Assembly (NCBI GenBank): GCA_002269645.1 | Contig: NIVC01002552.1 | Coordinates: 1 to 64,000, forward strand | Length of the DNA: 64,000 bases | Reading direction: 5' to 3' | Source of the DNA: Macrostomum lignano | Lineage: Eukaryota | Shown here: one piece after another, positions 39,501 through 64,000 of the stretch | Layout of the letters: each line of letters begins with the position of its first letter | Position numbering within the stretch: the stretch's first letter is position 1 | The notes under the pieces: model-generated | Told to the model about the DNA's origin: nothing | Databases searched by the model: none | Seen by the model: the letters and a program-made list of their open reading frames with translations, nothing else | Made by a program: the position numbers and the translations under genes

Positions 39501-40589
39501 TGACAGTGAAGGTCACATGCCTGACAGTCAAAATGGTCACATCGAGCACTCACTCACACAGACGCGGTCACCCCGCAGACCAATAATAGCACGGTCACCC
39601 CAGACCAGTCCAGTCACATCTGCTAACCGGAAGTGCCAGGTGCTTATCTCGGTCAGCATGCCCTTCGGCAGCATCCAGCCGCCTTCGCTGGGCCGCGGCA
39701 CTGTGTCGGCCTGCTGCAGGGACACCCGCAGGCCCAGCGGCAGCAGAGCCTCCTCGTATCGCTCGCCAAACTCCGAGAACGACTCAACGGAGCTGCGCTG
39801 CGGCACGTTCAGCACAAGGGTGAGGCCGCTGTCGGGTCCAGCCGCGGCGACGAGGCGAGTCGGCGGCCGGAACACGAAGCAGTTCATGAAGTCATGGTGG
39901 TAGTACACGCTGAAGTTTAGGAAGGTGCAGGGCAGCTTCTGGTAGCGGCAGAAGATGATGTAGTCGGCCGGCTGCAGGCCGCTGGCCGGCAGGTCGATGA
40001 AGTGGCTCAGGAAGAAGCGGAACTTGTCCTTCTGCTGCAGCTCGCCGGAGTCGGGCAGCACGATGGCGTCCTCGGTGCCAATGAGGATGTCGCCGGCCGG
40101 GCCGGAGCTCGCGTTGCGGCGCAGTGTCAGGCGCGGGTTGATGGGGCCGATGGGGTCGCAGATGATCACGTCGGGGAAGGCGTAGCCGCCCAGGATGAAG
40201 CTGGTCTGGACGCTGATGGGGTAGGAGAAGTAGTGCATCACCTCCACGGTCAGGTGCGTGGCCACCCCGGCGGTGACCACCGTCAGAATGGCCGCCCACA
40301 CGATCCGGCGGCACCAGCCGTTCGCCTGGGCCAGCTGGCGGATGCCGTGCGCCGTGGTGTTGCCAGCGAAGTCCTTGAAAATCGCTGACAGCCCCGCCTG
40401 CGGCCACTGGTGACAGCTGCGTCCGTGCCGGCACCGGCTGCTGGCCTGCCGCTGCTGCGGCCGCGGCTGCCAAACGCTGCGACGACTTCTGGCGAAGCGC
40501 AGCGGCCGAGGCGCTCCGGGAACGCGGCAGGTCGACAGGCGAAGCGACCCGTTCTCGGCCGGGTGGGCCGGCGACGAAGGACCGGACAT
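36568..40589 (-). CDS. DEG/ENaC (amiloride-sensitive) cation channel subunit
   Basis: Exons 40589-39628, 38858-38462, 37116-36568 in phase. [10 protein letters not shown] (HG motif), TM1, FPDVIIC, GLTLVL, Cys-rich thumb (CNC...DCPNPC), QALWP, TM2 [23 protein letters not shown] (GxS filter). Confidence 0.93.
37230..38300. repeat. 29-30-bp minisatellite ATGACCCAGATTGCTAAAA(C)CCAGACAGCT
   Basis: About 36 units, with a short run of truncated 15-bp units near 38160-38250. Confidence 0.96.
38886..39545. repeat. 19-bp minisatellite CACCTGACAG(T/C)AACGGTCA
   Basis: About 34 units filling DEG/ENaC intron 1. Confidence 0.95.
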
Positions 40590-43036: not shown

Positions 43037-45431
43037 TCAGGGCAGGGCGTCAGCGGCGGCGGAGGGGTCGTCGCCCGCCTTTGAAATGTCGGCGGAGCCT
43101 ACCAGCTCGTAGCTGGCGCCGCCGCCGACTCCGTCGCAGTCGACCAGCCGCAGCGGCCGAAAAAGCGACAGGCCGGCGGCGAACTTCAGCGACATCAGGA
43201 AGCCGAACAGGGCGCCGATGGAGGCGCCGGCTAGCACGTCGCTCCAGTGGTGGTGATAGTCAGACACGCGGCTGCCACACACGAAGCTGCAAGCGAGTGA
43301 GGAGCGAGTGAGACGGGGAAATCAGGCCAACTGCTCATTGCTGCCACCTGGGGTGCTGGCGACTAATCTTTGAGATCTCAGGGTTGCCCAGCAACTCAGG
43401 ATTTGGGAGGCTGGCCCAGCAACTGGGGATCTGGGAGGCTGGCCCAGCAACTGGGGATCTGGGAGGCTGGCCCAGCAACTGGGGATCTGGGAGACTGAGG
43501 ATCTGGGAGACTGAGGATCTGGGAGACTGAGGACCAGGAGGCTGAGGATCTGGGAGACTGAGGACCAGGAGGCTGTGGATCTGGGAGACTGAGGATCTGG
43601 GAGACTGAGGATCTGGGAGGCTGAGGACCAGGAGGCTGAGGATCTGGGAGACTGACGATCTGGGAGACTGAGGATCTGGGAGACTGAGGACCAGGAGGCT
43701 GTGGATCTGGGAGACTGAGGATCTGGGAGACTGAGGATCTGGGAGACTGAGGATCTGGGAGACTGAGGATCTGGGAGACTGAGGATCTGGGAGGCTGAGG
43801 ACCAGGAGGCTGAGGACCTGGGAGACTGAGGATCTGGGAGACTGAGGATCTGGGAGGCTGAGGATCTGGGAGACTGAGGATCTGGGAGACTGAGGATCTG
43901 GGAGACTGAGGATCTGGGAGACTGAGGATCTGGGAGACTGAGGATCTGGGAGACTGAGGATCTGGGAGACTGAGGACCAGGAGGCTGAGGACCAGGAGGC
44001 TGAGGATCTGGGAGGCTGAGGATCTGGGAGACTGATGATCTGGGAGGCTGGCCTAGCAATTAGGGATCTGGGAGGCTGGCTCAGAAACAAGGGATCTGGG
44101 AAGCTGAGGATCTGGGAGGCTGGGGATCTAGGAGGCTGGCCCAGCAACTAAGGATCTGGGAAGCCCAGCAACTGAGGATCTGGGAAGCCCAGCAACTGAG
44201 GATCTGGGAAGCCCAGCAACTGAGGATCTGGGAAGCCCAGCAACTGAGGATCTGGGAAGCCCAGCAACTGAGGATCTGAGAAGCCCAGCAACTGAGGATC
44301 TGAGAAGCCCAGCAACTGAGGATCTGAGAAGCCCAGCAACTGAGGATCTGAGAAGCCCAGCAACTGAGGATCTGAGAAGCCCAGCAACTGAGGATCTGAG
44401 AAGCCCAGCAACTGAGGATCTGAGAAGCCCAGCAACTGAGGATCTGAGAAGCCCAGCAACTGAGGATCTGAGAAGCCCAGCAACTGAGGATATGAGAAGC
44501 CCAGCAACTGAGGATCTGAGAAGCCCAGCAACTGAGGATCTGAGAAGCCCAGCAACTGAGGATCTGAGAAGCCCAGCAACTGAGGATCTGAGAAGCCCAG
44601 CAACTGAGGATCTGAGAAGCCCAGCAACTGAGGATATGAGAAGCCCAGCAACTGAGGATCTGAGAAGCCCAGCAACTGAAGATCCAAACTGCGCGGCAGC
44701 ACTCACCCGGCCAGCGCCAGCAGGGCCAGCTGGTAGACATTTTTCACAGGATGCATTGGATGCCGGAAGCCCAGCCGAGCCTGCAGGTACAACGCCAGGA
44801 AGACAGCCACGAACATGCTGAAGGAGGAGTGGCCGCTGGGGAAGGACATGCTGGCCTCGTCCAGCGCCTTGGGCGCCACGGCGGCCGCTCCGCAGGCCCC
44901 CAGCGGGCTGAGCAGCAGGCCGGGACGGCAGGCGCTGGCGTTGAGCAGCTGGCAGACGGCCAGGAAATGCGGCCGCTGCCGACCGAAGCCCAGCTTGCCG
45001 GCTACGGTGACCAGCTCAGTGCACAGCAGGCCGAACACGCCGGCGTACAGGGCCCGCAGCAGCGCCGACACGAAGCCGGCCGACCGCTCCGACAGGCACC
45101 GCTGCAGGCAATCCGTCAGTTGCCCCCGCGCGGCCGGCTGGTCGCACAGCAGCCGCAGCGCCTCCACCACCAGGATGGTTGCCACGGCAACGGCGATTCC
45201 GCCGCCGACAGCCGGAGCGAAGGGCACAGTGTCCTTTCTGTAGGGGTAGGCGATGGACTCGTCTGTGCAGAAGAATTCGCGGCGAAACGGCCTGACGCCC
45301 GAGTGCAGCACGATCGAAGGCGCCGCCACGCACAGCAGGGCGACCGCGTGCGAGGCGATTGAGAGGGACAGGCGGAGCTCGCTGGGCGGCGGCATGGCTG
45401 GCAACTGGCTTTGATCTGCCGTCACCGGCAT
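43037..45431 (-). CDS. PLPP: Lipid phosphate phosphatase (PAP2 / wunen-like)
   Basis: Exons 45431(or 45395)-44707 and 43286-43037. [26 protein letters not shown]1 [12 protein letters not shown]2 SFPSGHSS, C3 [16 protein letters not shown] all intact. Confidence 0.94.
43385..44690. repeat. Compound minisatellite (28-bp, 18-bp CTGAGGATCTGGGAGA, 27-bp CCCAGCAACTGAGGATCTG(A/G)GAAG)
   Basis: Fills the PLPP intron; shares the CTGAGGATCTGGGAG core with 30932-31358. Confidence 0.95.
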
Positions 45432-48302: not shown

Positions 48303-48527
48303 TCATCGCACAAACAGCACGTAGAATGCCATCACAGTGCAGGCGATGGCCACGACAATGTGCAGCCGGACTCCGATCACCGCCCCCTTGTACAGGACGC
48401 CCCACAGGCCCGACTTCTCTGAGAAGCACCACTGCCGCAGGCGGGGTACCCGGCGCAGGTAGGCGCAGGTGCAAACAAACAGCAGCGACATCACCAGGGC
48501 GCCATCAAAGCTGTAGGCGTTTGTCAT
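48303..48527 (-). CDS. TMEM167B: Protein kish-B (small Golgi membrane protein)
   Basis: Single-exon 74 aa [74 protein letters not shown], colinear with TMEM167B (MTNVYSLDG...LLFVCTCAY...VPRL...SEK.G.WGV.YK.AVIG.RLH). Confidence 0.95.
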
Positions 48528-51500
48528 GTCTGCTGGAAGGCGATTTGCAATCACATTGGCGATTGCAGAATAACTGAGCCCGGGTAATGTGTTTTATCCC
48601 ACTAAATTGCGATAAAGTTGGTAAACGGCAGGAGTAACACTTCGTCAATGCCTCGTCACCTAATTAGTGCTACTAACCATAAATAATTAGTACTAACTTA
48701 GGCTTATCAGGCAGTTTAGCCTGTTTTGCCTGCTAGTCAACAAAATATCTAATAGAGATTATTTATTGGAACTCTATTGGCAACCTAAGGGGTTGTAGTT
48801 GTAGTGTTCTACCGCCCACAAAAAGGCATAAAAATTGTTAATGTAAAAGTTTAATCATAGAATGCTACTGTAAGTAGACTAGTGCACACATGTGTATTGA
48901 AACCCTGAATCATGTTACTATTTATAGCAAATGAATGAGTCATGATACTACTTATAGTAAGGAATGAATCATGATAATTTATAACCCAGAATCTATTATC
49001 TATCGTTACTAATTATAGCACAAAAATGAGTCATGTTACCCTTTATAGGGCAACACCCGAGTCATGTTGCTATTTATGGTTTGCAAAATTGCCTATAAAT
49101 ACAAGTGGTCCAAAACAGACCCAGAGCCAACAACCGAACCTCCAGAAGGAGACGCTCCAAAGAGGAAGCCTTAGGAGGACTTCCTGAAGACTAAGTTAAT
49201 CGAGACTTGGTCGAGTTCTTGTGGTAAGCCTTACTCATTTGCGCCCATTGTCTGAGTCGACTCATTATTGTTGTTGAGATTGAGTCTGTTGAGACTCTTG
49301 AGTCTATTGAGACTTCATTGGTTATAGTCTCCAGAAGGACTACCCTGATAGATCTTAGAAGACTATCAGTGATTACCAGAGCTATACCTAGAGTACATTG
49401 AGGCACTGCTAGAAGGAGAAGGCTTATTTGAAACCGCAGTTTGGCGCAGGGATCCCATTGTTAATTTGAAGCTTCTGATTGGTCCGAACAACAGATACTG
49501 GCCGGAGACACTCCAGCGGAAGTAAAAGTGCAAAGGACCAGAACTACAAAGAAGTAAGGTGCCTGATCTATAGAGACTACTTGCAGTCGAGATCTACTCA
49601 TCTCAAGAAGAACTAATCCGGATTCAAGGTAATAACTACCTTCAGTTGATTACTGGGTTGCCTAGCAGTAGCTAGAAGTGATTGTTCTTTGATTACTGAG
49701 AAAGGTCTTAGTAATAAGGAACACATCATAGTCTAGTGTTTAGAGTATCAGACTCATGACTCAATACTTTTATATATGCAACAAGATTAAAGCTTTAAAA
49801 AACCCATATAGACATGCCTAATAGATACAAACCTCCCACAAATTGAAATTTTAGGTGCATTTTACTAATTGATATTAGCTATCAATTGGAATTTTCTATT
49901 TATTAGTCATAATTGATATACTATTATAATATTATACTAATTATAGCACTTCTACAGTATAATTGCTATTATCTAACCACTAATAATATGCCAGATTTTT
50001 TAATATTCATAACATAAAAGTAAATGAGTCATCACCAAAGCTAAAATTCAAAACTATGCTAAATAGACTCAATAAAAATGCTAGGCTATTTATATTATTA
50101 AAATAAAATAATCATATATTCTTCATAGGCATTTTAGTCTACTATCTATATCTTTTTGTTTTAGAATAAAATATTATAGTATTCAATTTTATTGGTTTAT
50201 AAATTATAGTATAGTACAGTACTTTGTCTTTATTTAATCTGCTTTCAGAAGTACTTAAATTAAATGTGAGTTCAAAATTTGTGAATCAAATCAAGAAATA
50301 TAGCAATAGAATAGGTCTAAAAAACCTAGCAGTTTACAACTTCTACCAATAAATGCAACAAACTACATAGCAAAAAGTTCTAAAAAATTCAGACTGAAAA
50401 ACTGAAAAAATGTTTATTTTTTATAGAGCACGAAACGTTATACTAGCGCCTATAATTTTAAACTTGTGCGTGCCCTCTAGCCCTTTAGGAGAGCAGCTTT
50501 TTGTTATATTTTTTGGAGGGTGAACTGGTGAACCCAATCATTACCCTTCAAGAGCTTTAAAAAGGTCGCGCAAAAAATAAAAGTAAAAACGTTGTTAGTT
50601 AGTATAGAATGTGATCTACGGACCACAAACACATCAACCACCTGGGTCGATTCAATAACATAAAAAAGGTTCTTGTCTTCATTTTTGTAATTTTCTATTA
50701 GATTATAAGAAATGTATACTATTTGTCAGTGAAGTTTTTCATGTAATGTTATATAGATTTAGGCAACTCTTCGTATCACTAAGTGTAATAATAAAATTTT
50801 TTTATTTATAAATATTTGTCATTTCCAAGAATGTTATAATTTAAAGTTTTGTTACTTAACATAACAATGTAACGACTTTTTATGTGCTTTGAGGAAATTT
50901 TTATTGTTTTATGCTGCAACTAACACTTCAGTACTTTTTTGCGATTTGAATAATTCTTAATTTTTTTCTTCTAAAGTTTTTTTCTTATTTTAGATGCTTC
51001 TTTTTAACATATTCTGTAATTAAGAATTATCGGAATCCGGTCATGTAGACTTTTAAGCGCTAGGCGGTGCCGTGCGGCTTGCAAGAACTATAAGTAATTG
51101 CACTGGCTGTCTGTGTGTAAACTAAATCTTTGAAGTAACTACTGACCTTATTACTTCAATTTTGAGCTATCGTGTGATCAAAAATCTCAAGTTTGACTCT
51201 ATATTATTATTTGCTTTTAATTGCTTGCTTGCTTGGCCTTGGCTTAGCATATTTCCATATTATATAGTTTTGTTACAACGTTAAAAGCTATCCAGTTAGA
51301 TATTATTTTACTTTAAGCCGCTAATTTTTTTGCTAAAAACGTTTAGCAGGGTTAGCTTCCCTACTATATTTGCACAACTCCTAGCATGTAAGGCTTGTCT
51401 AAAACTTAAAAGTAATAAATTTAACAACTTTCGTGCAGTTAATAAGGTACATTGAGTGTATTTCATTCTAGCTGCATAAAAAGATGTGTACTGCACTATT

Positions 51501-51818
51501 TACTTATTATAGTTTATGTTTTATAATTATAGATTTAATAGAATTATAGATTTTCAAATGGTCTATTTATAGAAGGAACTGAAAACTCAAAGCTTACTTT
51601 TGTTTGTTAATTTTAGGCTAGTCTATATTTTATGGTTCTGGTTCGAATTTATACTTTACAGTTATTTTTTGTGTGGTCATGTTGCCTTATTACAGATGTC
51701 CACCATGTTTGGTGCATACCATTTTGATTTGATATTATATATGCCAAAAGATTATCTTGTGTATTTGGAGTACTCACAGCTTCAATCTTTGTAACCTTGC
51801 AAATTCCTCAAATTCCAG

Positions 51819-54800
51819 GCTCTGCAACAGGGCAGACTAATAATCTGCATCTGGTCTCAGGAGGCTGCTGGCCCAGTGTTCACCTGGGACAATGGAACTG
51901 TTGGGTGCCGCTGCAGCCACAGTCTGGAGCCATTGACACTGCAACAGTCAGCTGATCGCGCCGAGCTGCTGCAGGTGGGGCCTGGGATTGCAAAACTCGG
52001 TGCATGAAAAACCTTAATCGATAGAGAGATCGATAGACAAACTTTGATATTTCCACTTATAAGTTTTTCTTATTTGCCTTTCGACTTAGTCTATCTTAGC
52101 GTCCTCTTGCTTGCATCTGCATCTTCTTTCTCTGTCGAAAAAACTGATCCTGGCACAACACAAAACATTGTTACAATATTCTCTGCGGACTACTTAAAGT
52201 CAGTAAGTAAGTAAGATAACAGGAAAAGTAAGCATATATGCGTCATTTCCGCACGCAGGCAACCCTGGCAACTCTCGTCACCAGCGAGGTGTTCGCCGAC
52301 AGGCGCCGCTGCCGCCTCCGTCGGGCCACCTCGACTGGCGCCGCCAGCTCTGGCGCAGATTCGGCGCGCTGGTTCGAGGTCCACCCCGGCCTCAGCTGCG
52401 TCCTGGTCGCCTGCGGCTGCCGGCAGCACCTGCAGGAATTGGACAGCCTGGCCGCTCTGTTGGCCGGCGCGGTGCGAATGTTCCATTCAGAGGAGGACCC
52501 CCAGGTGCGCGGGCCGGCTTTATCAGTAAATGTTAAATTCAATTAGCTTAGCTAATTAGCTTACCTGTGTGCTTTCTGCAAGTCGACTGTGACTGTCACT
52601 TGATTTGCGGTAGCGCCTAAAGCCCCCTGCTAACTAACTGACTGTCTAAGCCAGACTGGGTGTCAGGGGCGCCAGATTTGGCGTCAGAGGCGCCAGATCG
52701 GGTGTCAGGGGCGCTAGACTGAATGTCAGAGGCGCCAGACTGGGTGTCAGAGGTGCCAGATTTAGTGTTAGATGCGCCAGATTAATTGGGTGTCAGAGGC
52801 GCCAGGCTGGGTGTCAGGCGCCAGATTGGGTGTCAGGGGCGCCAGATCAGGTTTCAGAGGCGCCAGATCGGGTGTCGAGGGCGCCAGATTGGGTGTCGAG
52901 GGCGCCAGATTGGGTGTCAGAGGTGCCAGATTGAGTGTTAGATGCGCCAGATTAATTGGGTGTCAGAGGCGCCAGGCTGGGTGTCAGGCGCCAGATTGGG
53001 TGTCAGGGGCGCCAGATCAGGTTTCAGAGGCGCCAGATCGGGTGTCGAGGGCGCCAGATTGGGTGTCAGAGGAGCCAGGCTGGGTGTCAGGCGCCAGATT
53101 GGGTGTCAGAGGCGCCAAGCTGAGTGTCAGGCGCCAGATTGTGTGTTAGGGATGCCAGATTGGGTATCAGAGGTGCCAGGCTGGGTGTCAGAGGCGCCAG
53201 ATTGGGTATCAGAGGTGCCAGGCTGGGTGTCAGAGGCGCCAGATTGGGTGTCAGAGGCGCCAGATTGGGTGTCAAGGGCGCCAGACTGGGTGTCAGATGC
53301 GCCAGATTAATTGGGTGTCAAGGGCGCCAGACTGGGTTTCAGATGCGCCAGATTAATTGGGTGTCAGAGGCGCCAGGCTGGGTGTCAGGCGCCAGATTGG
53401 GTGTCAGAGGCGCCAGATTGGGTGTCAGAGGCGCCAGGCTGGGTGTCAGGCGCCAGATTGGGTGTCAGAGGCGCCAGATTGGGTGTCAGAGGCGCCAGAT
53501 TGGCTGTTAGAGGCGCCAGGCTGGGTGTCAGAGGCTCCAAAGGCAATTTCTGATGCGTCAAACAGGGTGTCAGCGGGGCGAGCCTGATGGTAGCTGAAAG
53601 GAATTTTCGACCTTTGCATCCTATCCCATCCCAAAAATTTTAAACATTCCAAAACAGTCAAATAATTTGAATAATACAGGCTAGCGCCGCAAAGCGCCTG
53701 CAGCCGCTGCGCACCCTGCTGCCGCAGCTGGCCGCCGCCTGCGGCCCAGCCGAGCTTCTCTGCGCCCCCAGCATCTTGCGCTGCGGCCAGGCCTCGGAGG
53801 AGGCCGCCCTGGACCGGGCGCTGGCCGCCTACTTGGCCAAGTTCACCTGCCAGTACGGCTGCCTGCTGGTTGCCGGGCGCCGGGCCGCCGCCTCCCAGCA
53901 GTGGCGCCTCCTGTCAGCCACCGAGCAGATCCTGCTGGGCCACCTGGCGCTGGCGGCGGCTGATGGCGGCAGCGCCGACGTGCCTGTGTACATCGGCAGC
54001 CTGAGCAAGACTCTGGTGTTCCGGCTGGCCGCGGTCACCCTGCTGCCCGGCGTCTGTGCTCTGTGCGTCTGCGGCGGCCAGCCGACGCTGACTGACATCC
54101 TGCGGCACGCCGAGGCCGCCTGGACTCCCGTCAGCGGAGTGTTGTGTCAGGTGGGTGTTGTGTCAGGTGGGTGTTGTGTCAGGTGGGTGTTGTGTCAGGT
54201 GGGTGTTGTGTCAGGTGGGTGTTGTGTCAGGTGGGTATTGTGTCAAGTTAGTTTTGTGTCAGATGGGTGTTGTGTCAGGTGGGTTTTGTGTCAGGTGGGT
54301 TTTGTGTCAGATGGGTTTTGTGTCAGGTGGGTTTTGTGTCAAGTGGGATTTGTGTCAGATGGGTGTTGTGTCAGGTGGGTTTTGTGTCAGATGGGTGTTG
54401 TGTCAGGTGGGTTTTGTGTCAGGTGGGTTTTGTGTCAGGTGGGATTTGTGTCATGTGGGATTTGTGTCAGGTGGGTTTTGTGTCAGGTGGGTGTTGTGTC
54501 ATGTGGGATTTGTGTCATGTGGGATTTGTTTCAGGTGTTTTGTGTCAGGTAGGTGTTGTGTCTGGTTGGTGTTGTCAGGTTTTTGGTCAGGTGAGTGTTA
54601 CTGTACGTCTGTGGTACTTTGTCAGGTGGGTGTTGTGTCATTGTGTTGTGAGCCAGGGGGTATTGTTTCATGTGAATGTTACTGTCTGGGAATATTATGC
54701 CTGGGAAGCTTTAGCCAATCAAAGATCATAACAGGCTGTGCATGCGCCAACTGAGATGACCAACTGACTGACTCCCGCAGGCACTCGGCAGTGTTCAGCG

Positions 54801-55149
54801 CAGCCTGCCCGACAAGCTGAACCTGGACCCCAACATCGACTGCCTCTGCTACCGAGACGCTGCCGCCAACAGCTGCATCGTGTCCGCCATCCGCCCAGCC
54901 TCCGCGCCTCATCTGTTGCGGTTGATCGCCCACAGCGCGCCGCAGTTCTCCGAGGATCAGGCGGCGGATGCTGTGGCCGCCCCACTGCTGGCGCGTCGCA
55001 AGATGCAGCTCGGCTGGAGTCTGCAGGACTGCGCCTGCTATGCCGTGCGTGGCGACTCCTGCCAGCTGTACCTGGTTGCTAGGCCAGGCTTCCAGCCTGC
55101 CAGCCTGTCAGCTGTGCTGACGGAGCTCACTGGGAAGCTGGGGAACTGA
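51819..55149 (+). CDS. FUZ: Fuzzy planar cell polarity / ciliogenesis effector (tri-longin); initiator Met not encoded in first identified exon
   Basis: Exons 51819-51974, 52259-52504, 53680-54150, 54781-55149. GRRAAASQQWRLLSATEQILLGHL...DVPVYIG...RLAAVTLLPGVCALCVCGGQPTL matches FUZ GRVVAATEGWWRL..PEAVLLPWL...DYPVYLP...RLLTLTLLPSLELCLLCGPSPPL; WTPVSGVLCQ|ALGSVQRSLP aligns ungapped to WQPLLDPLRACLPLGPRALP. Confidence 0.85.
52648..53535. repeat. 19-21-bp minisatellite GCGCCAGATTGGGTGTCAGAG
   Basis: Fills the FUZ intron; same family as 60545-61045. Confidence 0.94.
54139..54655. repeat. 16-bp minisatellite GTGGGT(G/T)TTGTGTCAG built from the FUZ exon-intron junction
   Basis: Starts inside the exon and decays distally. 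Confidence 0.93.
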
Positions 55150-55335
55150 TGCTGCTACAGTTGGGATCCTGGGAACTGATGTTGCTACAGTTGGGATGCT
55201 GGGAACTGATGTAGCTGCAGTTGGGATGCTGGGAACTGATGTTGCTACAGTTGGGATGCTGGGAACTGATGTAGCTGCAATTGGGATGCTGGGAACTGAT
55301 GTAGCTGCAGTTGGGATGCTGGGAACTGATGTAGC
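55141..55335. repeat. 30-bp minisatellite GGGAACTGATG(T/C)(A/T)GCT(G/A)CAGTTGGGATGCT containing the FUZ stop
   Basis: About 6.5 units starting at the last two codons. Confidence 0.92.
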
Positions 55336-56039
55336 TGCAGTTGGGATGCTGAAGAACTGGTTTTGACATAGTAAAAGGCCTAATTGTTTATTCCAAGTAG
55401 CATTTATAAGCTCATATGTAAGGCTTGCTGAGCAAGTCTTAAGTCTCTCCAGTCTCTTGAGGCCTGCTTTTCTTGCAAATTTCTGCTTGAGCAGTTAATC
55501 CAATGTAATCCCAAATTCTCTAAGTTTCAATGTTTGTTAAGTTTAACTTGCATAATGCACTTTTGCACAGCACTGTTGAGTTATGGCGACTATTGCATTG
55601 AACTCTGAATAAAGATTTCAAGTCACTTTGAAGTTAGAAGCATTAGAAGTTGAAGTTTGAATCGCAAGGCATTTAAAAGCAACTTATTTCTTTAAAATCG
55701 AAATCTATTTACAGCTTTGCAGTACAAAAAGATGCAAACGTATTACTGAAAGTAGTGCGTATTAGAGTTGCAAGCATATTTAATAATAAAGTTTTTGTTT
55801 GGCGACGTAAAAGTATCAATATTCAAAAATAATTTGGCAAAATCTGAAGTTTGGGTGAAAAAGAACTCAGTTTAGAGCATTAAACTATAAAATATTGTAA
55901 AATGTGCACAATTAAATTCCGTTAATGTTGAATCTGGGAGAAAACACGCATGGTGCTCATGCCAGATGCTTGAGCACTTCACCCAGACGACCTCACGAGT
56001 GTCCTTTGGCATGCTTCTGTAAGCAATAGTACTTTTACC

Positions 56040-56315
56040 TTAGATTGGGCGCCACTGGATCAGATTGGGCACCACTGAATCAGATTGGGCGCCACTGTAT
56101 CAGATTGGGCGCTACTGAATCAGATTGGGCGCCACTGTATCAGATGGGGCGCTACTGAATCAGATTGGGCGCCACTGTATCAGATTGGGCGCTACTGAAT
56201 CAGATTGGGCGCCACTGTATCAGATGGGGCGCCACTGTATCCGATTGGGCGCCACTGTATCCGATTGGGCGCCACTGTATCAGATTGGGCGCTACTAAAT
56301 CAGATTGGGCGCCAT
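56040..56315. repeat. 20-bp minisatellite CAGATTGGGCGC(C/T)ACTG(T/A)AT
   Basis: About 13 units just past the innexin stop. Confidence 0.92.
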
Positions 56316-56363
56316 CATTCAAAATGAGTTTTCAAAGTGGGTGACAGACGGCAGACTTTGTCA

Positions 56364-59300
56364 TCACACCGACGCCAGGCTCTCCATATCGCTGGCCGCT
56401 TCTGCAACACCCGCAGGGTTGTCCCCTCCACCGCCGTCTGCCTCCCGTTCTTCTCGACTGTCTCCGTCGCTGTCGGAGCCGTTGGCGCTGCTGCCCGTCT
56501 CGCCGACATCCTCGCTGCCATCGGCGCTGTCGACCCCGTCGCTGCCTTCAGCAGCCTCTTCGCTCTCGCTGCCCTCTTCAGCTTCTTTCTCGACATCCTC
56601 GCTCTCCTCCTGATCGGCTTCATCGACGAGGCTCTCCTCGCCGCCGCCGTCACTCTCGCTGACGTCTTCCTCCTCGTCGTCGCCCTCGTCGTCATCATCG
56701 CCACCTTCGCCGCCTCCGTCATCATCGTCCTCATCGTCTTCGTCAGCTGGACCGTCGCCGTCGTCCTCGCCGATGTGGCAGTAGCCGGAGCTTCCACTCC
56801 TGGCCTCGCCAGCAAATCCGTCATCGTCGGCAGCGTTGGCAGCCTCGGCCGCCGAGTCGGCCCGGTCTCTGCTGTCCTGGGCCTCGTTTACAATTGCGAC
56901 CGCGGCAGCCAGCGTTCTTGCCGCAGGTGCATCGGCGGAGGCATCGCAGTCCAGCTGGGCCTCACAGTCGCAGAAATGATCAGCGCTGACGTCCTTGAAT
57001 AGCCTGCGCCTATCGTCTCGCTGACTCTCCTCGTCATCCTCGAGGTCGTCTCCCGGTCTGTCGGGCAATTTCGCCCACTTCACTCGTTTGAACTTGAAGC
57101 CAATCTTTCGGGGCCTCTTGTGAACGGGTGCGGGCTGGGCGGATTCCTCCTGGCTCAGGGACCGCGCCGAGGAGGCGGCGCTGCTCGTGATGGCGCCGGT
57201 CACCGAGCCTTCGGGCTCGTGTCGCGACCGGAATTTCCGGTAGAGGCCGCAGCAGATGTCGCTAGCGACGGAGTTGCCGCAGTTGATTGACAGCATGCTG
57301 ATGAGTAATGCGCCGTCATGCCGAAGGTAGTCTTGGGCGAATGACCTGCGATGTTAAGCGGTGAGGGGTTATTTGTGCAACTGCTGGCAGCAGTGGATCC
57401 AGAGCCAGTTAAGACTGCCCATTCACACGTCACTCGCTCTCACGGATCCGTAGGCAGACACGGTTTCGCGCAAAGCGTCCATCTGCCCTGACTTCCAATG
57501 ATCGGGTGGTGTGCATACTTGAAGTACTCGTATAAAGTATCATTATACTTTGCGAATTGCCAGGTTTGACGTTCGTGAAAGGTAAGTGCTCAAGCTCCTA
57601 GATCAGCTTTCCGTGTCTATTGCATCCTAGCATTCGGAAGGCGCATCTTTATCAGACAGAGCACACAATTATGGAGCCGTCAGAGGCCTTTTGCCATCAT
57701 AAAAGACTATTTTTACATTGTAACAAGGCTCAGTTTAGACACTGAAAATCCCACAACAACTTTTCACACTGGTTGGACCGCGTTGCACCTTGAAAAGCCA
57801 AGATGTACTTTGAAACCCAGGAAGACCCACGTTGCACTCAAGAAGAACCACTTTGCACTCAGGGAGACCCACTTTGCACTCAAGAAGACCCACTTTGCAC
57901 TCAAGAAGACCCACTCTGCACTCAAGAAGACCCACTTTGCACTCAAGAAGATCCACTTTGCACTCAAGAAGACCCACTTTGCACTCAAGAAGACCCACTT
58001 TGCACTCAAGAAGATCCACTTTGCACTCAAGAAGACCCACTTTGCACTCAAGAAGACCCACTTTGCACTCAAGAAGACCCACTTTGCACTCAAGAAGACC
58101 CACTTTGCACTCAAGAAGATCCACTTTGCATTCAAGAAGACCCACTTTGCACTTAGGAAGACCCACTTTGCACTCAAGAAGACCCACTTTGCACTCAAGA
58201 AGACCCACTTGGCACTCAAGAAGACCCACTCTGCACTCAAGAAGACCCACTTTGCACTCAAGAAGACCCACTTGGCACTCAAGAAGACCCACTCTGCACT
58301 CAAGAAGATCCACTTGGCACTCACGAAGACCCACTTTGCACTCAAGAAGACCCACTCAGGAGAGAACAGCGTTGCTTTCCTTCAGAATCAAACCTCACAA
58401 AATCTGCATCCCATGCAAACTCGCCTCCTACCTGATGACTCGCCTCTCTGCCGGATTGGCGCACGGAGCGCCGCTCAGGAAGATCATCCGCTTCACGCTT
58501 CGCTTCACCGGACAGACTGGCAGGAGCCAAGCCACCCAGACTGCCAGGCTGATGAGCGACATCGCCAGCAGGAAGGTGAACCAAAACCACAGGAATATGA
58601 ACAGCTTCTCGTGAAGCATGTTCACCGGCAGGGCGCACTGGGCGAACTGATGCTGGGCACCGGAGGACTGCCGGGTGAGCACGGCGCAACAGCCGCTCCT
58701 GGGGAACAGCCCGGTGGCTCGCCAGTCCCTGCCTGCGGTGGGGGGGAGAAGCCGGACTATTAGTGTGTTATAGCTCAGTGGTCAGCTGTTGCTTATCCCA
58801 AGGTTGTCTTAGAAGCGCCATTGTTGGGGGCGTCACAACAATTTTGAAGGGTGCGCCTAATCAGGTGCCGTAGTTCTTTGTCAGCCTATTGTGCGGGTGC
58901 CCCCTTGCCCCCTCGCCTCTGGCTACCCGTGACTTTGCTTCTCTGCCGTATAGACATCCAAGTATCACTTAAAGCCAGTATCTGTGGCGGTTTTACAAGT
59001 CTATTGATATTCATTTTGAAAAAAGCACAACTGAACATTACAAACTAGTGAAGTTTAAGCAAAATTGCAGCACTTACTACTACTCTCTCTCTCTCTCTCT
59101 CTCTCTCTCACTAGATACATACAGACGGGGATGGGTCCATCGTTCCAGTGCTTTGCTAGCGACTATTCTGAGAAATTGATAATAACGCGCTGAAACAAGG
59201 GGAGCAAAGCCAAAGAAAAGCCTTGCTCAGAGACCCCAGAGAAGCTCCTCTCCCCCCTCTCCTCTCACCCGCTGCCAGATCAGCCAGCAAGGAGGCGCCG

Positions 59301-60346
59301 AAACTCGCCGCCTGCACCGGCAGGGCCGCCAGGCCGGTCTTGGAGTTGAAGGAGCCGAGCTGCAACAGGCTGGCCATCAGCAGCAGCTGGCAGACGGCGT
59401 TGCCAGCGTAGAGGCACTTGACGGCCAGGTAGGCAGCGGCCAGGCGGGACCTGCAGGCCGCCCAGCAGTCCAGCCAGAGGTCCGCCTGACTCACGCAGCT
59501 GCTCAGAAGTTTCTCTCGCCGGCCGTCCGGCACTTTCGTTGCCAGCGGCTCGGCGGCGGCCTCGCGAGCCGAGCGCACCAGCTGCAGCAGGTTGACGCCG
59601 GCGCCGCAGCGGGCCACGGCGACCTGCCAGACGATGCGCGGGCTGTACAGCAGCGCGCCCTGCAGGCCGAGCACCAGCGGAAGCCACTGGTAGTAGAAAA
59701 TCTTGCGGCTGCGGTACGGTTGGTCCCAGTCCGGGTCGGAGGAGTCGATGAGGAACTCGGCGGGGGGCACATTGTAGGTGCCCTCCGAGTAGCAGATGCT
59801 GTTCACGTAGCTGCTTTGGCCTTCGTGCGAGCCCACGATGGAGGGCAGGTAGCAGACTATCGGGCTGGCGAAGTAGTTCTTGGCAGTGGCGAGGCTGCTG
59901 CAGACCAGCAGGAACCAGACTGCAATGCGAGTTCGAGTTCTATGCTTGTGGCTGAGTCAGCGGTAAATGTGTCTTGTCGAGCGATTTACGACCTTGAGAA
60001 CTACTAAGTGTGTACATTCCTGACGATGGGAGAGTCAGGGCTGCTGTACAACCCGTGTGAGCGTGTGTGTGAATGCAATATCCCGCGCTCTAAATGCAAT
60101 AAATGTCCAGGATTGCCTCGCTGCTGCTTGTGCCACGGTGTCGCCAAAGGCGTAGCGCTAGGGTGCACGCAACCTTCCTGCGAATATCCATCTGTACTTG
60201 AGTCCTGTGTGAAACTGCGTGTGCTCAGGGGTCAAAGCCGACTCACCAGAGTAGATGAAGCTCAGCTTGTCGGCAAAGTCGTCCAAGCCAACGTGGCTGA
60301 GCACCTCCGCCTGCCGCATGTAGGTGAAGAAGTCTTGAAGAATCAT
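56364..60346 (-). CDS. inx: Innexin (gap-junction protein) with long acidic C-terminus
   Basis: Exons 60346-60247, 59919-59269, 58732-58432, 57345-56364 in phase. DDFADKLSFIYS, YFASPIVCY, YVNSICY, YYQWLP, PRIVW, YLAVKCLY, LFPRSGCC, CALPVNMLHEKLFIFLWFW, FAQDYLRHDG. Confidence 0.94.
57815..58358. repeat. 21-bp minisatellite CACTTTGCACTCAAGAAGACC
   Basis: About 25 units in the innexin intron. Confidence 0.95.
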
Positions 60347-60544
60347 TGCGGCTGGTTAAAGCAATTCTGCAATATTTTTAGGATGCGGTTGGGTCGGTGT
60401 TTGACAAATCATTGCATTCAGCAACTCATTTTAGTGCATGCGTACGATCGAGTATTCGAATCGGGATGGCCAGTGCGCCAGGGGGCAAATAGCGCCTCAT
60501 TGAAGGCCTCACTGAAGCATTTGGTGCAAGCACAAATGAGGTCC

Positions 60545-61045
60545 GGGGTGCCAGATTGTGTGTCAGGGATGCCAGCTTGTGTGTCAGGGATGCCAGATTG
60601 GGTGTCAGGGATGCCAGATTGGGTGTCAGGGATGCCAGATTGTGTGTCAGGGGTGCTATATTGTGTGTCAGGGGTGCTAGATTGTGTGTCAGGGGTGCTA
60701 TATTGTGTGTCAGGGATGCCAGATTGGGTGTCAGGGATGCCAGATTGGGTGTCAGGGATGCCAGATTGGGTGTCAGGGATGCCAGATTGGGTGTCAGGGA
60801 TGCCAGATTGGGTGTCAGGGATGCCAGATTGGGTGTCAGGGATGCCAGATTGGGTGTCAGGGATGCCAGATTGTGTGTCAGAGGTGTCAGATTGTGTCAG
60901 AGGTGCCAGATTGTGTGTCAGGGATGCCAGATTGTGTGTCAGAGATGCCAGATTGGGTGTCAGGGATGCCAGATTGTGTGTCAGGGATGCCAGATTGTGT
61001 GTCAGAGGTGCCAGATTGTGTGTCAGGGGTGTCAGACTGGGTGTC
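60545..61045. repeat. 21-bp minisatellite GATGCCAGATTG(G/T)GTGTCAGG
   Basis: About 24 units upstream of the innexin ATG. Confidence 0.94.
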
Positions 61046-61964
61046 GAAAAGCCAGTAAGAGCGCCCATTTGTGTCAGAGGCCCGCCCAGTTTGGGTCCTA
61101 GGGACACGAATTTTGCAAAAGTTTTGCTGTGACAAGTGATTTGCAATAAATGCATGACTCATACTCTCTCACCTTCATCCGAATGAAGCAGCATTTAACT
61201 CACTATCAGTGTGATGCAGCATCCATCGCTCACTTGAGTCACATTCTACCAACGCAGCAGTTGATTTATTATGAGTAAAAACTCGCACAGGAAGTCATTA
61301 ATTTATAAAGATGAGTTTTTGTACGCCAAACGTTTCGCAAAACAGCGCACAAGCCCACTAGATAAGGGCAGATATGGGAAAGAAATGTAAGTGCTCAATC
61401 GACCGCTGTATTCAACAACAAGTTCACGTGCTCACAGCGCATGGCCAGCGAGCTGCACCTCTCCCTCACTGCACCCTCCCCGCCGCTTTTCCCGCTTCCC
61501 ATTGGTTCGGTCTTGGCGTTGGCAAAGAGCAATTATTTGAACAAGTTTGAGAAGTGAGCGGACGCAGACAGTCGATTTAAAACGCGGGCTGGGGCCCTGG
61601 AGAGCTCTGAAATAAGGGGAAGAGACGGGTATGAGTTCTGCAGCAGTTTTTAACGAGATCGTGCATGCATTTTAGACTGGTCTGTGAGCAGGGACGGTTG
61701 TTCACACCGAATGCTGAGAGCTCGAGCCTGACTCGAAGTTCAGAAGCGCGTAGAACTTCTCTCCGCCGCGTGGGCAAGTGCATGTCAGTACGTCATTGTG
61801 GGAATTTTATTGGCTACGACTTGAGCTGCGATTAGGTAAAAAAGTACAAAAGGCACTCTTGTCAGAGGACTATTTACGCGAAAAAGAAAGTACTTCATCT
61901 GTACTGACAGATTCATTCCAACTAGGCGCTAAGCTGCTTTCTGTTTCAGCTAGTGTCGGCCTGA

Positions 61965-62200
61965 TGGATCAACATGCAGATGACCGTCGTTCTCTGCATG
62001 CCGGACGACATCGAGGCTGCCATTTGGTGCCGAGGCGCTGACGAACAGGCGACGGAGCTTCTGTGAGGTCAGCAGTTCGTGTACCTCGGCGGTCTGGTTC
62101 CCGGCGTCCGCGAGGATCTGCGGCGTCGCCGCGGGTTAGCCTGAGGCCCTGACCGCCTATCGTCCCGCCGGCCTGCCCCGACCAAGCGACCTGTTGCGCC
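61965..62200 (+). mobile_element. Decayed RTE-like LINE reverse-transcriptase fragment
   Basis: HADD (YADD-like) followed, with frameshifts, by QQFVYLGGLVPGVREDLRRRRGLA* (cf. FxYLG...D..RR.GLAW). Confidence 0.65.
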
Positions 62201-63094
62201 GGTTGCAGCCGGTGTTAGGCTTTCTGTTCACCGGGGTCTTAATTTGTCCGGGGGACATCGCAAAGCAAAATTATTGTCGCTTTGCGATAACCTACCCTGG
62301 ATAATCCAAGGCACAACAAAATCGGGCTTTGAAATATCCTAGGTCTTGAATTGTCCGGGGTGAATAAAGATTGGGGTGGCAAGTTAGTCAAATTAGCTCG
62401 TATTTACAGGATAAGGCGCATGTGAATGCGTGGGGCAGAATGACAACATTAAGCGAGAATGGGACTGACTCAGAGTGCTTGGGAGGGGCGGATAAGATGC
62501 AGTCTAAGAATAAATCGATAATAGACTGTCGTTAAATGTACCCGCACAAGCGTACATGCCATGAATATCAGTGTACGAGCTAATAGCCCGAAATTAATGT
62601 TGGCGCAAATTATAATACACATTATTTTCAGATAGTTGGAAAATATTTCTTGTCCAAGTCCTACGTAATCGTTTTTAGCGACGAGCATGCTGAGCTGCCG
62701 GAACATTCCAGTACAAAAGAGAGAGATAATCTGCAGAAGACGTCTACCGCATCATCAAATGCAATAATACTTATCAGCTGGCTGGTTTCTCAAAACATGA
62801 AAACGGAAAGCATCTCAATCAAAGCATCGGAAGAAGGCTGTGGCTCATCACGCTTCAATCAGCGGATCGCCAGTTTTTGATTTATCGAATTAGATTGGTG
62901 AATGGAGTAACAGACAGCTTTTCGGTTGACAATATGAGCTTTGATTTTAGTTCTTTTTGGAGTGTGTGAAGCGCGAAATTGTTATTGAAACATACACCGT
63001 TAAATAAGCATGACGCAGATGTTTGCCATTGAAAAAGTAGCAAAAAGTTATTTTCTAATTTGCGAAAAGTGATGTCGAAATTTTGCTATTTCTA

Positions 63095-63400
63095 GCCCCG
63101 GATATCAGTAGCCGGATGTCCTAAGGCAAACCTCTGTCTCCGCAGGCTGACCCCTCTCTTTCAACCTACAGTCGGATGTCCCAAGACAACTTCCCCTTCT
63201 TGTGGTCTCCGGGCCGGATAGCAGAGTCAGTGCCGTAGGATGTCCGGGAGAGACATCTCAAAGTGCCCGGACAATGCAAAGCAGCTCAAGATATCCGGGA
63301 AGGACAAAACAAAGCAGGTTTTTTGCTTGGCAGTATCCGGGCAGATATCGTAAGTGCGTTCGGATATCCGGGCCAGACAAAAAAACCCGGATAGTCTAAA
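63095..63400. mobile_element. Possible DNA-transposon subterminal region
   Basis: Cluster of CCGGATA/TATCCGG motifs in both orientations; no TIR or TSD identified. Confidence 0.3.
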
Positions 63401-63964
63401 GTGTAACACCGGTGCAGGAGCTGCTGCTGACCCTGCAGGCGCCCTACCGGCGAGGAAAAGCGCGCACTCGACGTCAGCGACCTGCGTCACGTCACCGACG
63501 TCACTGATGTGAATCGCTCTAACATCAATACGTGCCGATTGATTCACAACTCCATTACTGATTTCCTTAGAGATTCGCTCTTCAGTTTCTCTGCGCTCCA
63601 TAATCAGACAAAATCAGCTCATACGGCTGTTCAGTTTATTCGCGAGTCGCTCTTTTTACGCAGAATTTTCGCAGACCGCCTGCTATTAGTAGGGCATGCA
63701 GCACATTTTTAATAACGACAGTTTTGGCGAACTGCAAGAAACTCAAAATGCCTTGAATTGGTGGCAATAACAATACAGCAGAGCTCTGAGAACTATTCTT
63801 CAAGAAGCCGATCTCGAAGTTGCCGAGAGTCTGTCGGGCTGAAGATGAATAATAAATCCACTAGAGTCGTTGGGGACTCCAGCGCCACGTTTTGGTACTT
63901 GGGAATTGTTGAATATATGGAGTAAAATTGCTATAATAATGATAATAATAAGTTACACCTGCCC

Positions 63965-64000
63965 TAATAGACAGATATGCAACCGACAGCTCAGCCGCAG
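63965..64000 (-). mobile_element. End of a second copy of the SINE seen at 10934-11182
   Basis: CAGATATGCAACCGACAGCTCAGCCGCAG is a near-exact match to ~10937-10965. Confidence 0.7.

What the first reader, a model, noticed from the sequence alone, without database searches (positions are those of the whole stretch)
51790..51974. FUZ has no start codon: candidate initiator AUG donated by the spliced leader
Seen: the first FUZ exon starts after a clean acceptor (ttcctcaaattccag at 51818) in phase 0 (GCT CTG CAA CAG GGC AGA CTA ATA ATC TGC...). There is an in-frame TAA at 51792-51794 and no in-frame ATG until well into exon 2, which would remove most of the first longin domain. Established: flatworm spliced leaders end in AUG, which can serve as initiator (shown in Schistosoma). 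Inference: SL + exon gives M-ALQQGRLIICIWSQEAAGPVF, matching the FUZ N-terminal length (MGEEGTGGTVHLLCLAASSGVPLF). Translation of a ciliogenesis effector would then depend on trans-splicing.
Basis: partly seen in the sequence, partly recalled or inferred. Interest (0 to 1): 0.8.

Follow-up and report, generated by a model that had tools for sequence, protein, structure and literature searches.

The report
Flatworm FUZ gene lacking own ATG
The Macrostomum lignano FUZ (ciliogenesis) gene has no start codon of its own and most likely borrows the AUG at the end of the trans-spliced leader. This trick has been known in flatworms since 2006, so it is a plausible but unproven new example, not a new mechanism.

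Summary
The window is Macrostomum lignano contig NIVC01002552.1. A four-exon, all-phase-0 gene (51819-55149, 413 codons) is a true FUZ orthologue by sequence, profile and fold. Its first exon opens directly after TTCCAG|, an in-frame TAA lies 9 codons upstream, and the first in-frame ATG is codon 126.

Orthologue comparison puts the family's N-terminal strands at residues 7-23, so only a Met is missing. The 3.2 kb up to the divergent upstream gene holds no credible ATG-bearing exon.

The M. lignano spliced leader ends in ...TTGCATG, and the acceptor fits the published trans-splice motif [T/C]TNCAG. The SL AUG is an established initiator in Schistosoma and Echinococcus.

No SL-containing read or cDNA for this gene could be reached, so trans-splicing here remains inferred.

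One new detail: the GenBank model of the near-identical paralogue is a 5'-partial CDS. It starts exactly after a second, in-phase acceptor 12 nt downstream (CAACAG|51831). The junction may therefore be 51819, 51831 or both.

Verdict: a probable new member of a known kind. It is useful for annotation and easily testable. Interest is modest.

The parts
51600..51818 (+). Presumed outron (5' limit unknown): AT-rich, non-coding sequence. It carries upstream ATGs at 51632, 51679, 51696, 51705 and 51741. The frame-0 ones (51696, 51705, 51741) are closed by the TAA at 51792.
   Evidence: GC 0.20-0.34 in 100-nt bins. Codon log-odds -24 to -34. ORF 51600..51794 ends at the TAA. Candidate list.
51792..51794 (+). 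In-frame TAA, 9 codons upstream of exon 1. It rules out reading in from unspliced upstream sequence.
   Evidence: Identical in paralogue L002.
51813..51818 (+). Candidate SL trans-splice acceptor A, TTCCAG|. It fits the [T/C]TNCAG motif enriched at M. lignano SL acceptors and would give M-ALQQGRLIICIW...
   Evidence: Sequence. Motif from PMC8629364. ML2-derived UniProt models include the ALQQ codons.
51825..51830 (+). Candidate SL trans-splice acceptor B, CAACAG|, 12 nt downstream and also phase 0. It would give M-GRLIICIW...
   Evidence: The GenBank 5'-partial CDS PAA88628.1 of the paralogue starts at L002:10001, the first base after CAACAG. L002 is identical to the window here.
51819..51974 (+). 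FUZ coding exon 1: 52 codons, no ATG, phase 0 at both ends, donor CAG|GTGGGG. It encodes strands 1-2 of longin domain 1.
   Evidence: Junction confirmed by P0002, P0083 and P0084.
52259..52504 (+). FUZ exon 2 (82 codons). It contains the first in-frame ATG of the gene at 52478-52480 (codon 126).
   Evidence: The profile alignment to FUZ orthologues starts at its first codon.
53680..54150 (+). FUZ exon 3 (157 codons): end of longin 1 and longin 2. Its donor lies in the first copy of a 16-nt minisatellite.
   Evidence: (Fuz_longin_2, residues 192-279).
54781..55149 (+). FUZ exon 4 (122 codons plus TGA at 55147-55149): longin 3.
   Evidence: Same junction in the ML2 model P0001.
48303..48527 (-). 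Divergent upstream neighbour, Kish/TMEM167-type gene (DUF1242, 74 aa) with its own ATG at 48527. It bounds the FUZ upstream region at about 3.3 kb and means FUZ is not a downstream operon gene of a same-strand neighbour.

Best explanation
The FUZ pre-mRNA of M. lignano is probably SL trans-spliced at the 5' edge of its first coding exon. The acceptor would be TTCCAG|51819, the in-phase CAACAG|51831, or both. The 35-nt leader (CGGTCTCTTACTGCGAAGACTCAATTTATTGCATG) ends in AUG, so it would supply the initiator codon in frame. The product would be M-ALQQGRLIICIW... or M-GRLIICIW..., a full-length three-longin FUZ protein of about 410-414 aa.

Shown:
- The gene model and its identity as FUZ.
- The absence of any own in-frame ATG before codon 126.
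- The stop upstream of exon 1.
- The phase of both acceptors.
- The species and its SL sequence.

Inferred:
- That the SL is actually joined here.
- That ribosomes start on its AUG.
For: 1. Species and leader. The window is NIVC01002552.1 of assembly GCA_002269645.1, and NIVC is the M. lignano Mlig_3_7 assembly (PMC5730564). The single M. lignano SL ends in ATG and is found on 30-39% of genes. The top motif at SL acceptors is [T/C]TNCAG (PMC8629364; PMC5730564), and 51813-51818 is TTCCAG.

2. No own start. There is a TAA at 51792, no ATG in exon 1, and the first ATG is codon 126.

3. Only a Met is missing. hhalign against 14 orthologues gives 99.5% probability and E 4.5e-22, and starts at exon 2 = family column 37. 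The 52 codons of exon 1 therefore cover the family's first 36 columns. The strand1-strand2 motif maps to residues 7-23. Orthologues carry 1-14 residues before that motif (listing).

4. No credible upstream cis exon. There are 23 ATG...|GT phase-0 candidates in 48600-51790. All are AT-rich (GC 0.13-0.45, against 0.58-0.73 in the exons), and their donors match at most 3 of 6 consensus positions.

5. The RNA-seq-derived GenBank model of the paralogue is 5'-partial and begins exactly after an AG, with no upstream exon. The pipeline used TransDecoder on transcripts cut at SL peaks (PMC5730564).

6. Mechanism established elsewhere. The SL AUG initiates translation in S. mansoni, where more than 40 cDNAs need it (Cheng et al. 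2006, as reported in PMC9851317, and PMC12582326). The same use is inferred in E. granulosus and S. japonicum (PMC3510090).

7. FUZ identity. PDB phmmer hits only FUZ (1.4e-11). Foldseek's top four hits are FUZ chains (E 3e-20, TM 0.77), ahead of MON1.
Against: - No SL-bearing read, cDNA or protein for this gene was found. A query carrying the SL-encoded peptide recovered only the outron-reading ML2 fragment cluster.
- Only about a third of M. lignano genes are trans-spliced.
- The two database models disagree on the 5' edge (FQALQQ... against GRLIIC...), so the junction is not pinned down.
- Exon 1's similarity to FUZ N-termini is weak. It is not significant with phmmer or an N-terminal HMM, p is about 0.012 with the motif PSSM, and AF2 pLDDT is below 50 for residues 1-48.
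- FUZ's own cis donors (GTGGGG, GTGCGC, GTGGGT) are non-consensus. A poor donor score therefore does not by itself exclude an upstream exon.
Confidence: 0.7

Rival explanations
1. An unannotated upstream cis exon, somewhere in the 3.2 kb between the Kish gene and exon 1, carries the ATG and is cis-spliced to 51819. The most concrete version is ATG at 51696, 51705 or 51741, donor CTT|GTGTAT at 51758|51759, and a 60-nt mini-intron that removes the TAA.
For: One search lists 23 phase-0 ATG...|GT candidates, including the 60-nt-intron version and three '...ATG|GT' micro-exons (49076, 51558, 51632). FUZ's own donors are non-consensus, so weak donors can be functional in this gene. The 5' ends of lowly expressed genes are often missed by annotation.
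Against: - All candidates are AT-rich and score as non-coding.
- An extension of 6-21 residues has no counterpart in 14 orthologues.
- The RNA-seq-based GenBank model of the paralogue is open to its very 5' end at an AG and has no upstream exon.
- The paralogue carries a 5.9-kb LINE insertion 1.2 kb upstream, so any exon beyond 50611 would lie much further away in that copy.
Confidence: 0.14
2. The mRNA is not trans-spliced. Translation would start either at a near-cognate codon in exon 1 (for example CTG at 51822-51824) or at Met126, which would give an N-terminally truncated protein.
For: A CTG is the second codon of exon 1. Met126 is the first AUG of the ORF.
Against: - An unspliced leader holds at least five upstream ATGs, and the frame-0 ones end at the TAA.
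- Met126 would delete all strands of longin 1, yet exon 1 keeps an open, codon-biased frame.
Confidence: 0.07
3. The locus is a decaying or non-functional FUZ copy that lost its start codon.
For: The paralogue L002 has a 1-nt deletion (window equivalent 53968) that truncates its annotated protein to 237 aa. Both substitutions between the copies in exon 1 are non-synonymous.
Against: - The window copy keeps a 413-codon ORF across four exons with canonical splice sites and strong GC3 bias (0.62-0.90).
- It folds as a complete tri-longin FUZ.
- The single-base deletion in L002 may be a long-read assembly error.
- The two copies are too similar (2 substitutions in 1242 nt) for a selection test.
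Confidence: 0.05

Closest known systems
SL-AUG-initiated mRNAs of parasitic flatworms (Cheng, Cohen, Ndegwa & Davis 2006, J Biol Chem 281:733; S. mansoni, S. japonicum, E. granulosus)
   Same: The leader ends in AUG. The acceptor sits in phase at the very start of the conserved ORF. There is no own AUG that would preserve the orthologous N-terminus. The SL AUG is therefore the inferred (here) or demonstrated (there) initiator.
   Different: - The species here is a free-living, early-branching flatworm (Macrostomorpha).
- No cDNA or read evidence for this gene was reachable.
- There are two in-phase candidate acceptors 12 nt apart.
- FUZ did not turn up among the SL-AUG examples in the text passages read; gene lists and supplements were not fully searched.
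slORFs: ORFs created by start codons inside spliced leaders in nematodes, Oikopleura and trypanosomes (slORFfinder, PMC9851317)
   Same: The start codon is contributed by the trans-spliced leader and not by the gene.
   Different: Those mostly use near-cognate NUG codons inside the SL, and often create alternative or extended ORFs. Here a canonical terminal AUG would be the only way to make the conserved protein.
FUZ/Fuzzy, the tri-longin subunit of the CPLANE Rab23 GEF (PDB 7q3d, 7q3e, 9rs8, 9rs9)
   Same: The length is similar (413 against 418 aa). It has three longin domains. The best sequence and fold matches are FUZ chains, and hhalign to metazoan orthologues gives 99.5% probability.
   Different: Identity is only about 20%. 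There is an insertion of roughly 17 residues between strand 2 and helix 1. Pfam Fuz_longin_2 scores 23.0 bits, just under the 23.8 gathering cut-off, and longin 1 and 3 are not detected by Pfam.

Membership tests
Flatworm mRNAs that take their initiator Met from the SL 3'-terminal AUG | The organism has an SL RNA whose leader ends in AUG | tested here: met
   The window is M. lignano NIVC01002552.1. The SL is ...TTATTGCATG (PMC8629364), and the ATG is noted as a likely start codon in Macrostomum (PMC10468722).
Flatworm mRNAs that take their initiator Met from the SL 3'-terminal AUG | The mRNA is SL trans-spliced at an acceptor at the 5' edge of the ORF | not testable with these tools
   No read or cDNA data were reachable. 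Indirect evidence only: TTCCAG fits the trans-acceptor motif, and the paralogue's 5'-partial GenBank CDS starts exactly after an AG.
Flatworm mRNAs that take their initiator Met from the SL 3'-terminal AUG | The SL AUG is in frame with the main ORF, with no intervening stop | tested here: met
   Both candidate junctions (51819 and 51831) are phase 0, and the ORF is open for 413 or 409 codons.
Flatworm mRNAs that take their initiator Met from the SL 3'-terminal AUG | No own in-frame AUG that would give the conserved orthologous N-terminus | tested here: met
   The first ATG is codon 126, and a TAA lies 9 codons upstream. The family's N-terminal motif is at residues 7-23.
Flatworm mRNAs that take their initiator Met from the SL 3'-terminal AUG | Translation actually initiates at the SL AUG | not testable with these tools
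   This needs Ribo-seq, N-terminal proteomics or a reporter assay.
FUZ (CPLANE tri-longin protein) | Sequence similarity specific to FUZ and not to MON1 or HPS1 | tested here: met
   PDB phmmer returns only FUZ chains (1.4e-11 to 5.6e-11). The library-wide HMMER hits are 400-430-aa FUZ-like proteins, including mammalian FUZ. hhalign gives E 4.5e-22.
FUZ (CPLANE tri-longin protein) | Pfam Fuz_longin domains above the gathering threshold | tested here: inconclusive
   Only Fuz_longin_2 is detected, at 23.0 bits against a 23.8 cut-off (E 9e-5).
FUZ (CPLANE tri-longin protein) | Three-longin fold closest to solved FUZ structures | tested here: met
   The AF2 model has pLDDT 69 and pTM 0.67. Foldseek ranks 7q3d_C, 7q3e_C, 9rs8_A and 9rs9_A first (E 3e-20 to 2e-18, TM 0.74-0.77). 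MON1 comes next (TM 0.66) and BLOC-3 lower.

The most novel reading that the evidence does not exclude
FUZ protein output in M. lignano is gated by trans-splicing: only SL-joined transcripts can be translated. Two in-phase tandem acceptors would give two N-termini (MALQQGR... and MGR...). More broadly, a sizeable class of M. lignano genes now annotated as '5'-partial' would be complete once the SL AUG is added. That would make SL-AUG dependence an ancestral flatworm feature and not a neodermatan one.
Probability: 0.2. Interest if true: 0.5.

Novelty: new member of a known kind. Interest (0 to 1): 0.3.

Why it matters
- If confirmed, this is a clean example of obligatory SL-AUG initiation in a free-living, early-branching flatworm. 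The gene is conserved and has a clear phenotype (ciliogenesis and planar cell polarity effector).
- It would extend a mechanism documented mainly in parasitic flatworms.
- It explains why this gene is 'partial', fragmented or chimeric in all three public annotations. The practical fix is to add the SL AUG when calling ORFs on trans-spliced M. lignano genes.
- M. lignano has transgenesis, so it could also serve as an in-vivo reporter for SL-dependent translation.
- It does not change the understanding of the mechanism.

Tried and rejected
1. Word-indexed protein search with the full model found nothing: 8000 low-complexity candidates and no hits.

2. A query with the SL-encoded peptide (VSYCEDSIYCM) prepended was meant to fish out SL-bearing transcript ORFs. 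It found only the UniRef/GenBank cluster of P0002, none carrying SL-derived residues.

3. Exact look-ups of P0001 and P0002 for their contigs found nothing on record.

4. No FUZ gene is listed on the window contig in the look-up. I do not count this as evidence, because other obvious genes (for example the PAP2 exon at 44703-45431) are missing from that list too.

5. Searches for Mlig016781 or FUZ in full texts and in the supplements of PMC5816591, PMC8629364 and PMC5730564 found nothing. Wasik et al. 2015 is not held.

6. The SL 3' end (last 21 nt) was searched in the window with up to 3 mismatches, looking for a cis copy or an SL RNA gene. There were no matches. Rfam found nothing in the window.

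7. The paralogue comparison for conservation or dN/dS failed. The copies are 96-99% identical along the whole locus and differ by 2 substitutions in the CDS, which is too few.

8. phmmer of exons 1+2 against PDB, and an N-terminal HMM of orthologues, did not place exon 1 significantly.

9. A junction-spanning ATG (upstream exon ending in AT, plus the G of GCT) was rejected. That frame hits TAA after 7 codons (read).

10. The AG at 51778-51779 was rejected as an acceptor, because the SL AUG would then read LQSL and stop.

11. A survey of other genes for ATG-less first exons was not done beyond three neighbours. Kish and ASC have their own annotated ATGs. The PAP2 exon ORF opens with an ATG, but it is not annotated and was not checked as the true start.
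Full report
**Origin of the window.** An exact-protein look-up of the small minus-strand ORF at 48303-48527 (74 aa, DUF1242/Kish) found it on NIVC01002552.1 of assembly GCA_002269645.1, at the same coordinates as in the window. NIVC01000000 is the annotated Mlig_3_7 genome of the flatworm Macrostomum lignano (PMC5730564).

**Gene model.** Reading the sequence and assembling it gives four exons:
- 51819-51974
- 52259-52504
- 53680-54150
- 54781-55149 (TGA at 55147)

All introns are phase 0 and all have CAG| acceptors and |GTG donors. The ORF is 413 codons. The exons are GC-rich (0.58-0.73; GC3 0.62-0.90) against AT-rich surroundings (0.17-0.49 in 100-nt bins upstream). The same exon junctions appear in three public M. 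lignano models:
- UniProt A0A1I8G8X3 and A0A1I8GG03: exons 1-2 only.
- A0A1I8GNN2: exons 2-4, fused to unrelated downstream sequence.
- GenBank PAA88628.1, from the paralogue.

**Identity.**
- Pfam gives only a sub-threshold Fuz_longin_2 hit (23.0 against 23.8 bits).
- phmmer against all PDB chains returns only 'Protein fuzzy homolog' (1.4e-11; model residues 87-317 against FUZ 69-303).
- An exhaustive HMMER search of 1.84 billion representatives returns 82 hits. Beyond the two M. lignano fragments, these include many 400-430-aa FUZ-like proteins, among them mammalian FUZ.
- hhalign against 14 of these gives 99.5% probability and E 4.5e-22 over residues 54-395.
- An AF2 model (pLDDT 69, pTM 0.67) has three longin-like alpha/beta units.
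- Foldseek ranks the four FUZ chains first (E 3e-20, TM 0.77), ahead of MON1 (TM 0.66) and BLOC-3.

The gene is FUZ.

**The observation.**
- Exon 1 opens directly after ...aaattccag|. The frame upstream is closed by TAA at 51792-51794, with no ATG in between.
- The first in-frame ATG is codon 126 (52478-52480).
- Exon 1 is coding in this frame. It is the only open frame, with codon log-odds +7.2 against -15.5 and -14.0.
- The sequence is identical in the paralogous locus and consistent with two models from the independent ML2 assembly. This is not an assembly error.

**How much N-terminus is missing?**
- The profile alignment begins at the first codon of exon 2, which equals family column 37. 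The 52 codons of exon 1 therefore stand in for the family's first 36 columns.
- Generic methods could not place exon 1.
- A PSSM of the orthologues' strand1-loop-strand2 motif (xYLVCLTA..GVPLFxR) finds one outstanding placement: RLIICIWS + 3 residues + AGPVFTW at residues 7-23. It scores 15.1 against 5.9 for the next best, and 24 of 2000 shuffles reach it.
- AF2 predicts a strand at residues 6-13, at low confidence.
- Orthologues have 1-14 residues before this motif (listing).

Only a methionine, or at most a few residues, is missing. Starting at Met126 would remove every strand of longin 1.

**Where could the AUG come from?**

*(a) The spliced leader.*
- M. lignano has one SL, CGGTCTCTTACTGCGAAGACTCAATTTATTGCATG, on 30-39% of genes. 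The top motif at its acceptors is [T/C]TNCAG (PMC8629364; PMC5730564), and the site here is TTCCAG.
- All reported flatworm SLs end in AUG (PMC12582326).
- Cheng et al. 2006 showed that the SL AUG initiates translation. They reported it in frame in 28% of S. mansoni trans-spliced transcripts and required by more than 40 cDNAs (as summarised in PMC9851317).
- E. granulosus and S. japonicum show the same, with conserved usage (PMC3510090).
- The authors of the Macrostomum genome papers already flag the SL's final ATG as a 'translation start codon' (PMC10468722).

*(b) An upstream cis exon.*
- The region is bounded at about 3.3 kb by the divergent Kish gene.
- It holds 23 phase-0 ATG...|GT candidates. 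All are AT-rich (GC 0.13-0.45), with donors matching at most 3 of 6 consensus positions.
- The most concrete one (ATG at 51696, 51705 or 51741; donor at 51758|; 60-nt intron) would add an AT-rich extension that no orthologue has.

*(c) Non-AUG or downstream initiation.* This is possible but costly. The unspliced leader has several upstream ATGs.

- The paralogous copy (L002, NIVC01000180.1, 96-99% identical across the locus) carries the only GenBank model of this gene, PAA88628.1. It is labelled partial and starts GRLIICIW.
- Its first base, L002:10001, is the base after CAACAG.
- The Mlig_3_7 gene set was built from RNA-seq transcripts cut at SL peaks, with ORFs called by TransDecoder. A 5'-partial CDS therefore implies a transcript whose 5' end is at that AG and which has no upstream exon.
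- About 4 of the first 50 exon positions follow an AG (my count), so the coincidence is suggestive but not proof.
- Conversely, the ML2 models include the ALQQ codons, plus 6 nt of outron and 6 nt of intron 2. That looks like a boundary artefact.
- Either junction, or both, keeps the SL AUG in frame. The products would be MALQQGRLIICIW... or MGRLIICIW..., and the latter mirrors the short MAYL.../MSFL... N-termini of invertebrate orthologues.

**What could not be done.** No SL-containing read, cDNA or SL-flag for this gene was reachable. The two copies are too similar for conservation or selection tests. Trans-splicing at this gene therefore remains an inference, though a well-grounded one. I put SL-AUG initiation at about 0.7, an unseen cis exon at about 0.14, other initiation at about 0.07 and a dead copy at about 0.05.

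**Assessment.** This is a probable new example, in a free-living early-branching flatworm and in a conserved ciliogenesis gene, of a mechanism established in 2006. Its value is practical: it would repair annotations now marked 'partial', and it offers a testable reporter in a transgenic model. It is not conceptually new.

Noticed in passing
window 54142-54575: A 16-nt minisatellite (TTGTGTCAGGTGGGTT, 27 copies, 89% matches) starts inside the last codons of FUZ exon 3. Every copy recreates the CAG|GTGGGT donor used at 54150|54151. The period is not a multiple of 3, so use of a neighbouring copy's donor would shift the frame.
   Followed up: partly
window 55131-55359: A 30-nt tandem repeat (7.6 copies) begins 16 nt before the FUZ stop codon. 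The last codons (…GKLGN) and the TGA lie in its first copy, and each further copy carries the same GGGAACTGA.
   Followed up: no
window 52650-53539 (also 56042-56314 and about 60550-61100): FUZ intron 2 is mostly a 21-nt minisatellite (GCCAGATTGGGTGTCAGAGGC, 42 copies, with a higher-order 170-nt period). Arrays that look related by eye (their ORF translations share ...RLGVR... motifs) occur elsewhere in the window. Almost every intron and intergenic stretch of the window holds such arrays.
   Followed up: no
L002 2866-8771 (insertion relative to window 50611-50620): The paralogous locus carries a 5.9-kb insertion 1.2 kb upstream of FUZ exon 1. It has two long same-strand ORFs (525 aa and 1246 aa). 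By eye the layout looks like a non-LTR (LINE-type) retrotransposon, but no domain search was run. It is flanked by an apparent 10-bp target-site duplication (window 50611-50620 aligns on both sides). A second insertion of about 0.95 kb sits at window 49762.
   Followed up: partly
L002 about 11988 (window equivalent 53968): A single-base deletion in the paralogue's exon 3 shifts the frame, so its GenBank protein (PAA88628.1) ends after 237 aa (…AADGAAPTCLCTSAA). This is either a long-read assembly error or a decaying homeologue. The only other CDS differences are two non-synonymous changes in exon 1 (G29R, R47C).
   Followed up: partly
window 52259-64000 (UniProt A0A1I8GNN2, 2881 aa): The ML2-based UniProt model starts at FUZ exon 2 and leaves exon 4 through a spurious donor (…CQLYLV|). 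It then runs on for about 2500 residues through what appears to be repeats and unrelated downstream sequence, so it is a chimeric annotation. The exon 1-2 fragments are named 'HGH1 protein' in UniRef, a name the FUZ matches found here do not support.
   Followed up: partly
window 48303-48527 (-): A single-exon Kish/TMEM167-type gene (DUF1242, 74 aa) is arranged head-to-head with FUZ, 3.3 kb away. The two may share a bidirectional control region.
   Followed up: no
window 51819, 52259, 53680, 54781: All three FUZ introns are phase 0. Every exon begins GC(T/A) (Ala) right after CAG, and all three donors are CAG|GTG with non-consensus +4/+5 positions, unlike the GT[G/A]AG motif reported as typical for the species.
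   Followed up: no
window 18674-20092 (+), 26124-31745 (-), 36568-40589 (-), 44703-45431 (-), 59156-59836 (-): By eye from the ORF translations, other genes are recognisable: a PIAS-type SP-RING protein, an SLC26-type anion transporter, a DEG/ENaC (ASC) channel, a PAP2 lipid phosphatase and an innexin. Only the ASC channel has a tool result behind it: it is annotated with its own ATG at 40589 (635 aa, Pfam ASC). The PAP2 exon ORF also opens with an ATG (45431), but that gene is not in the annotation list.
   Followed up: no
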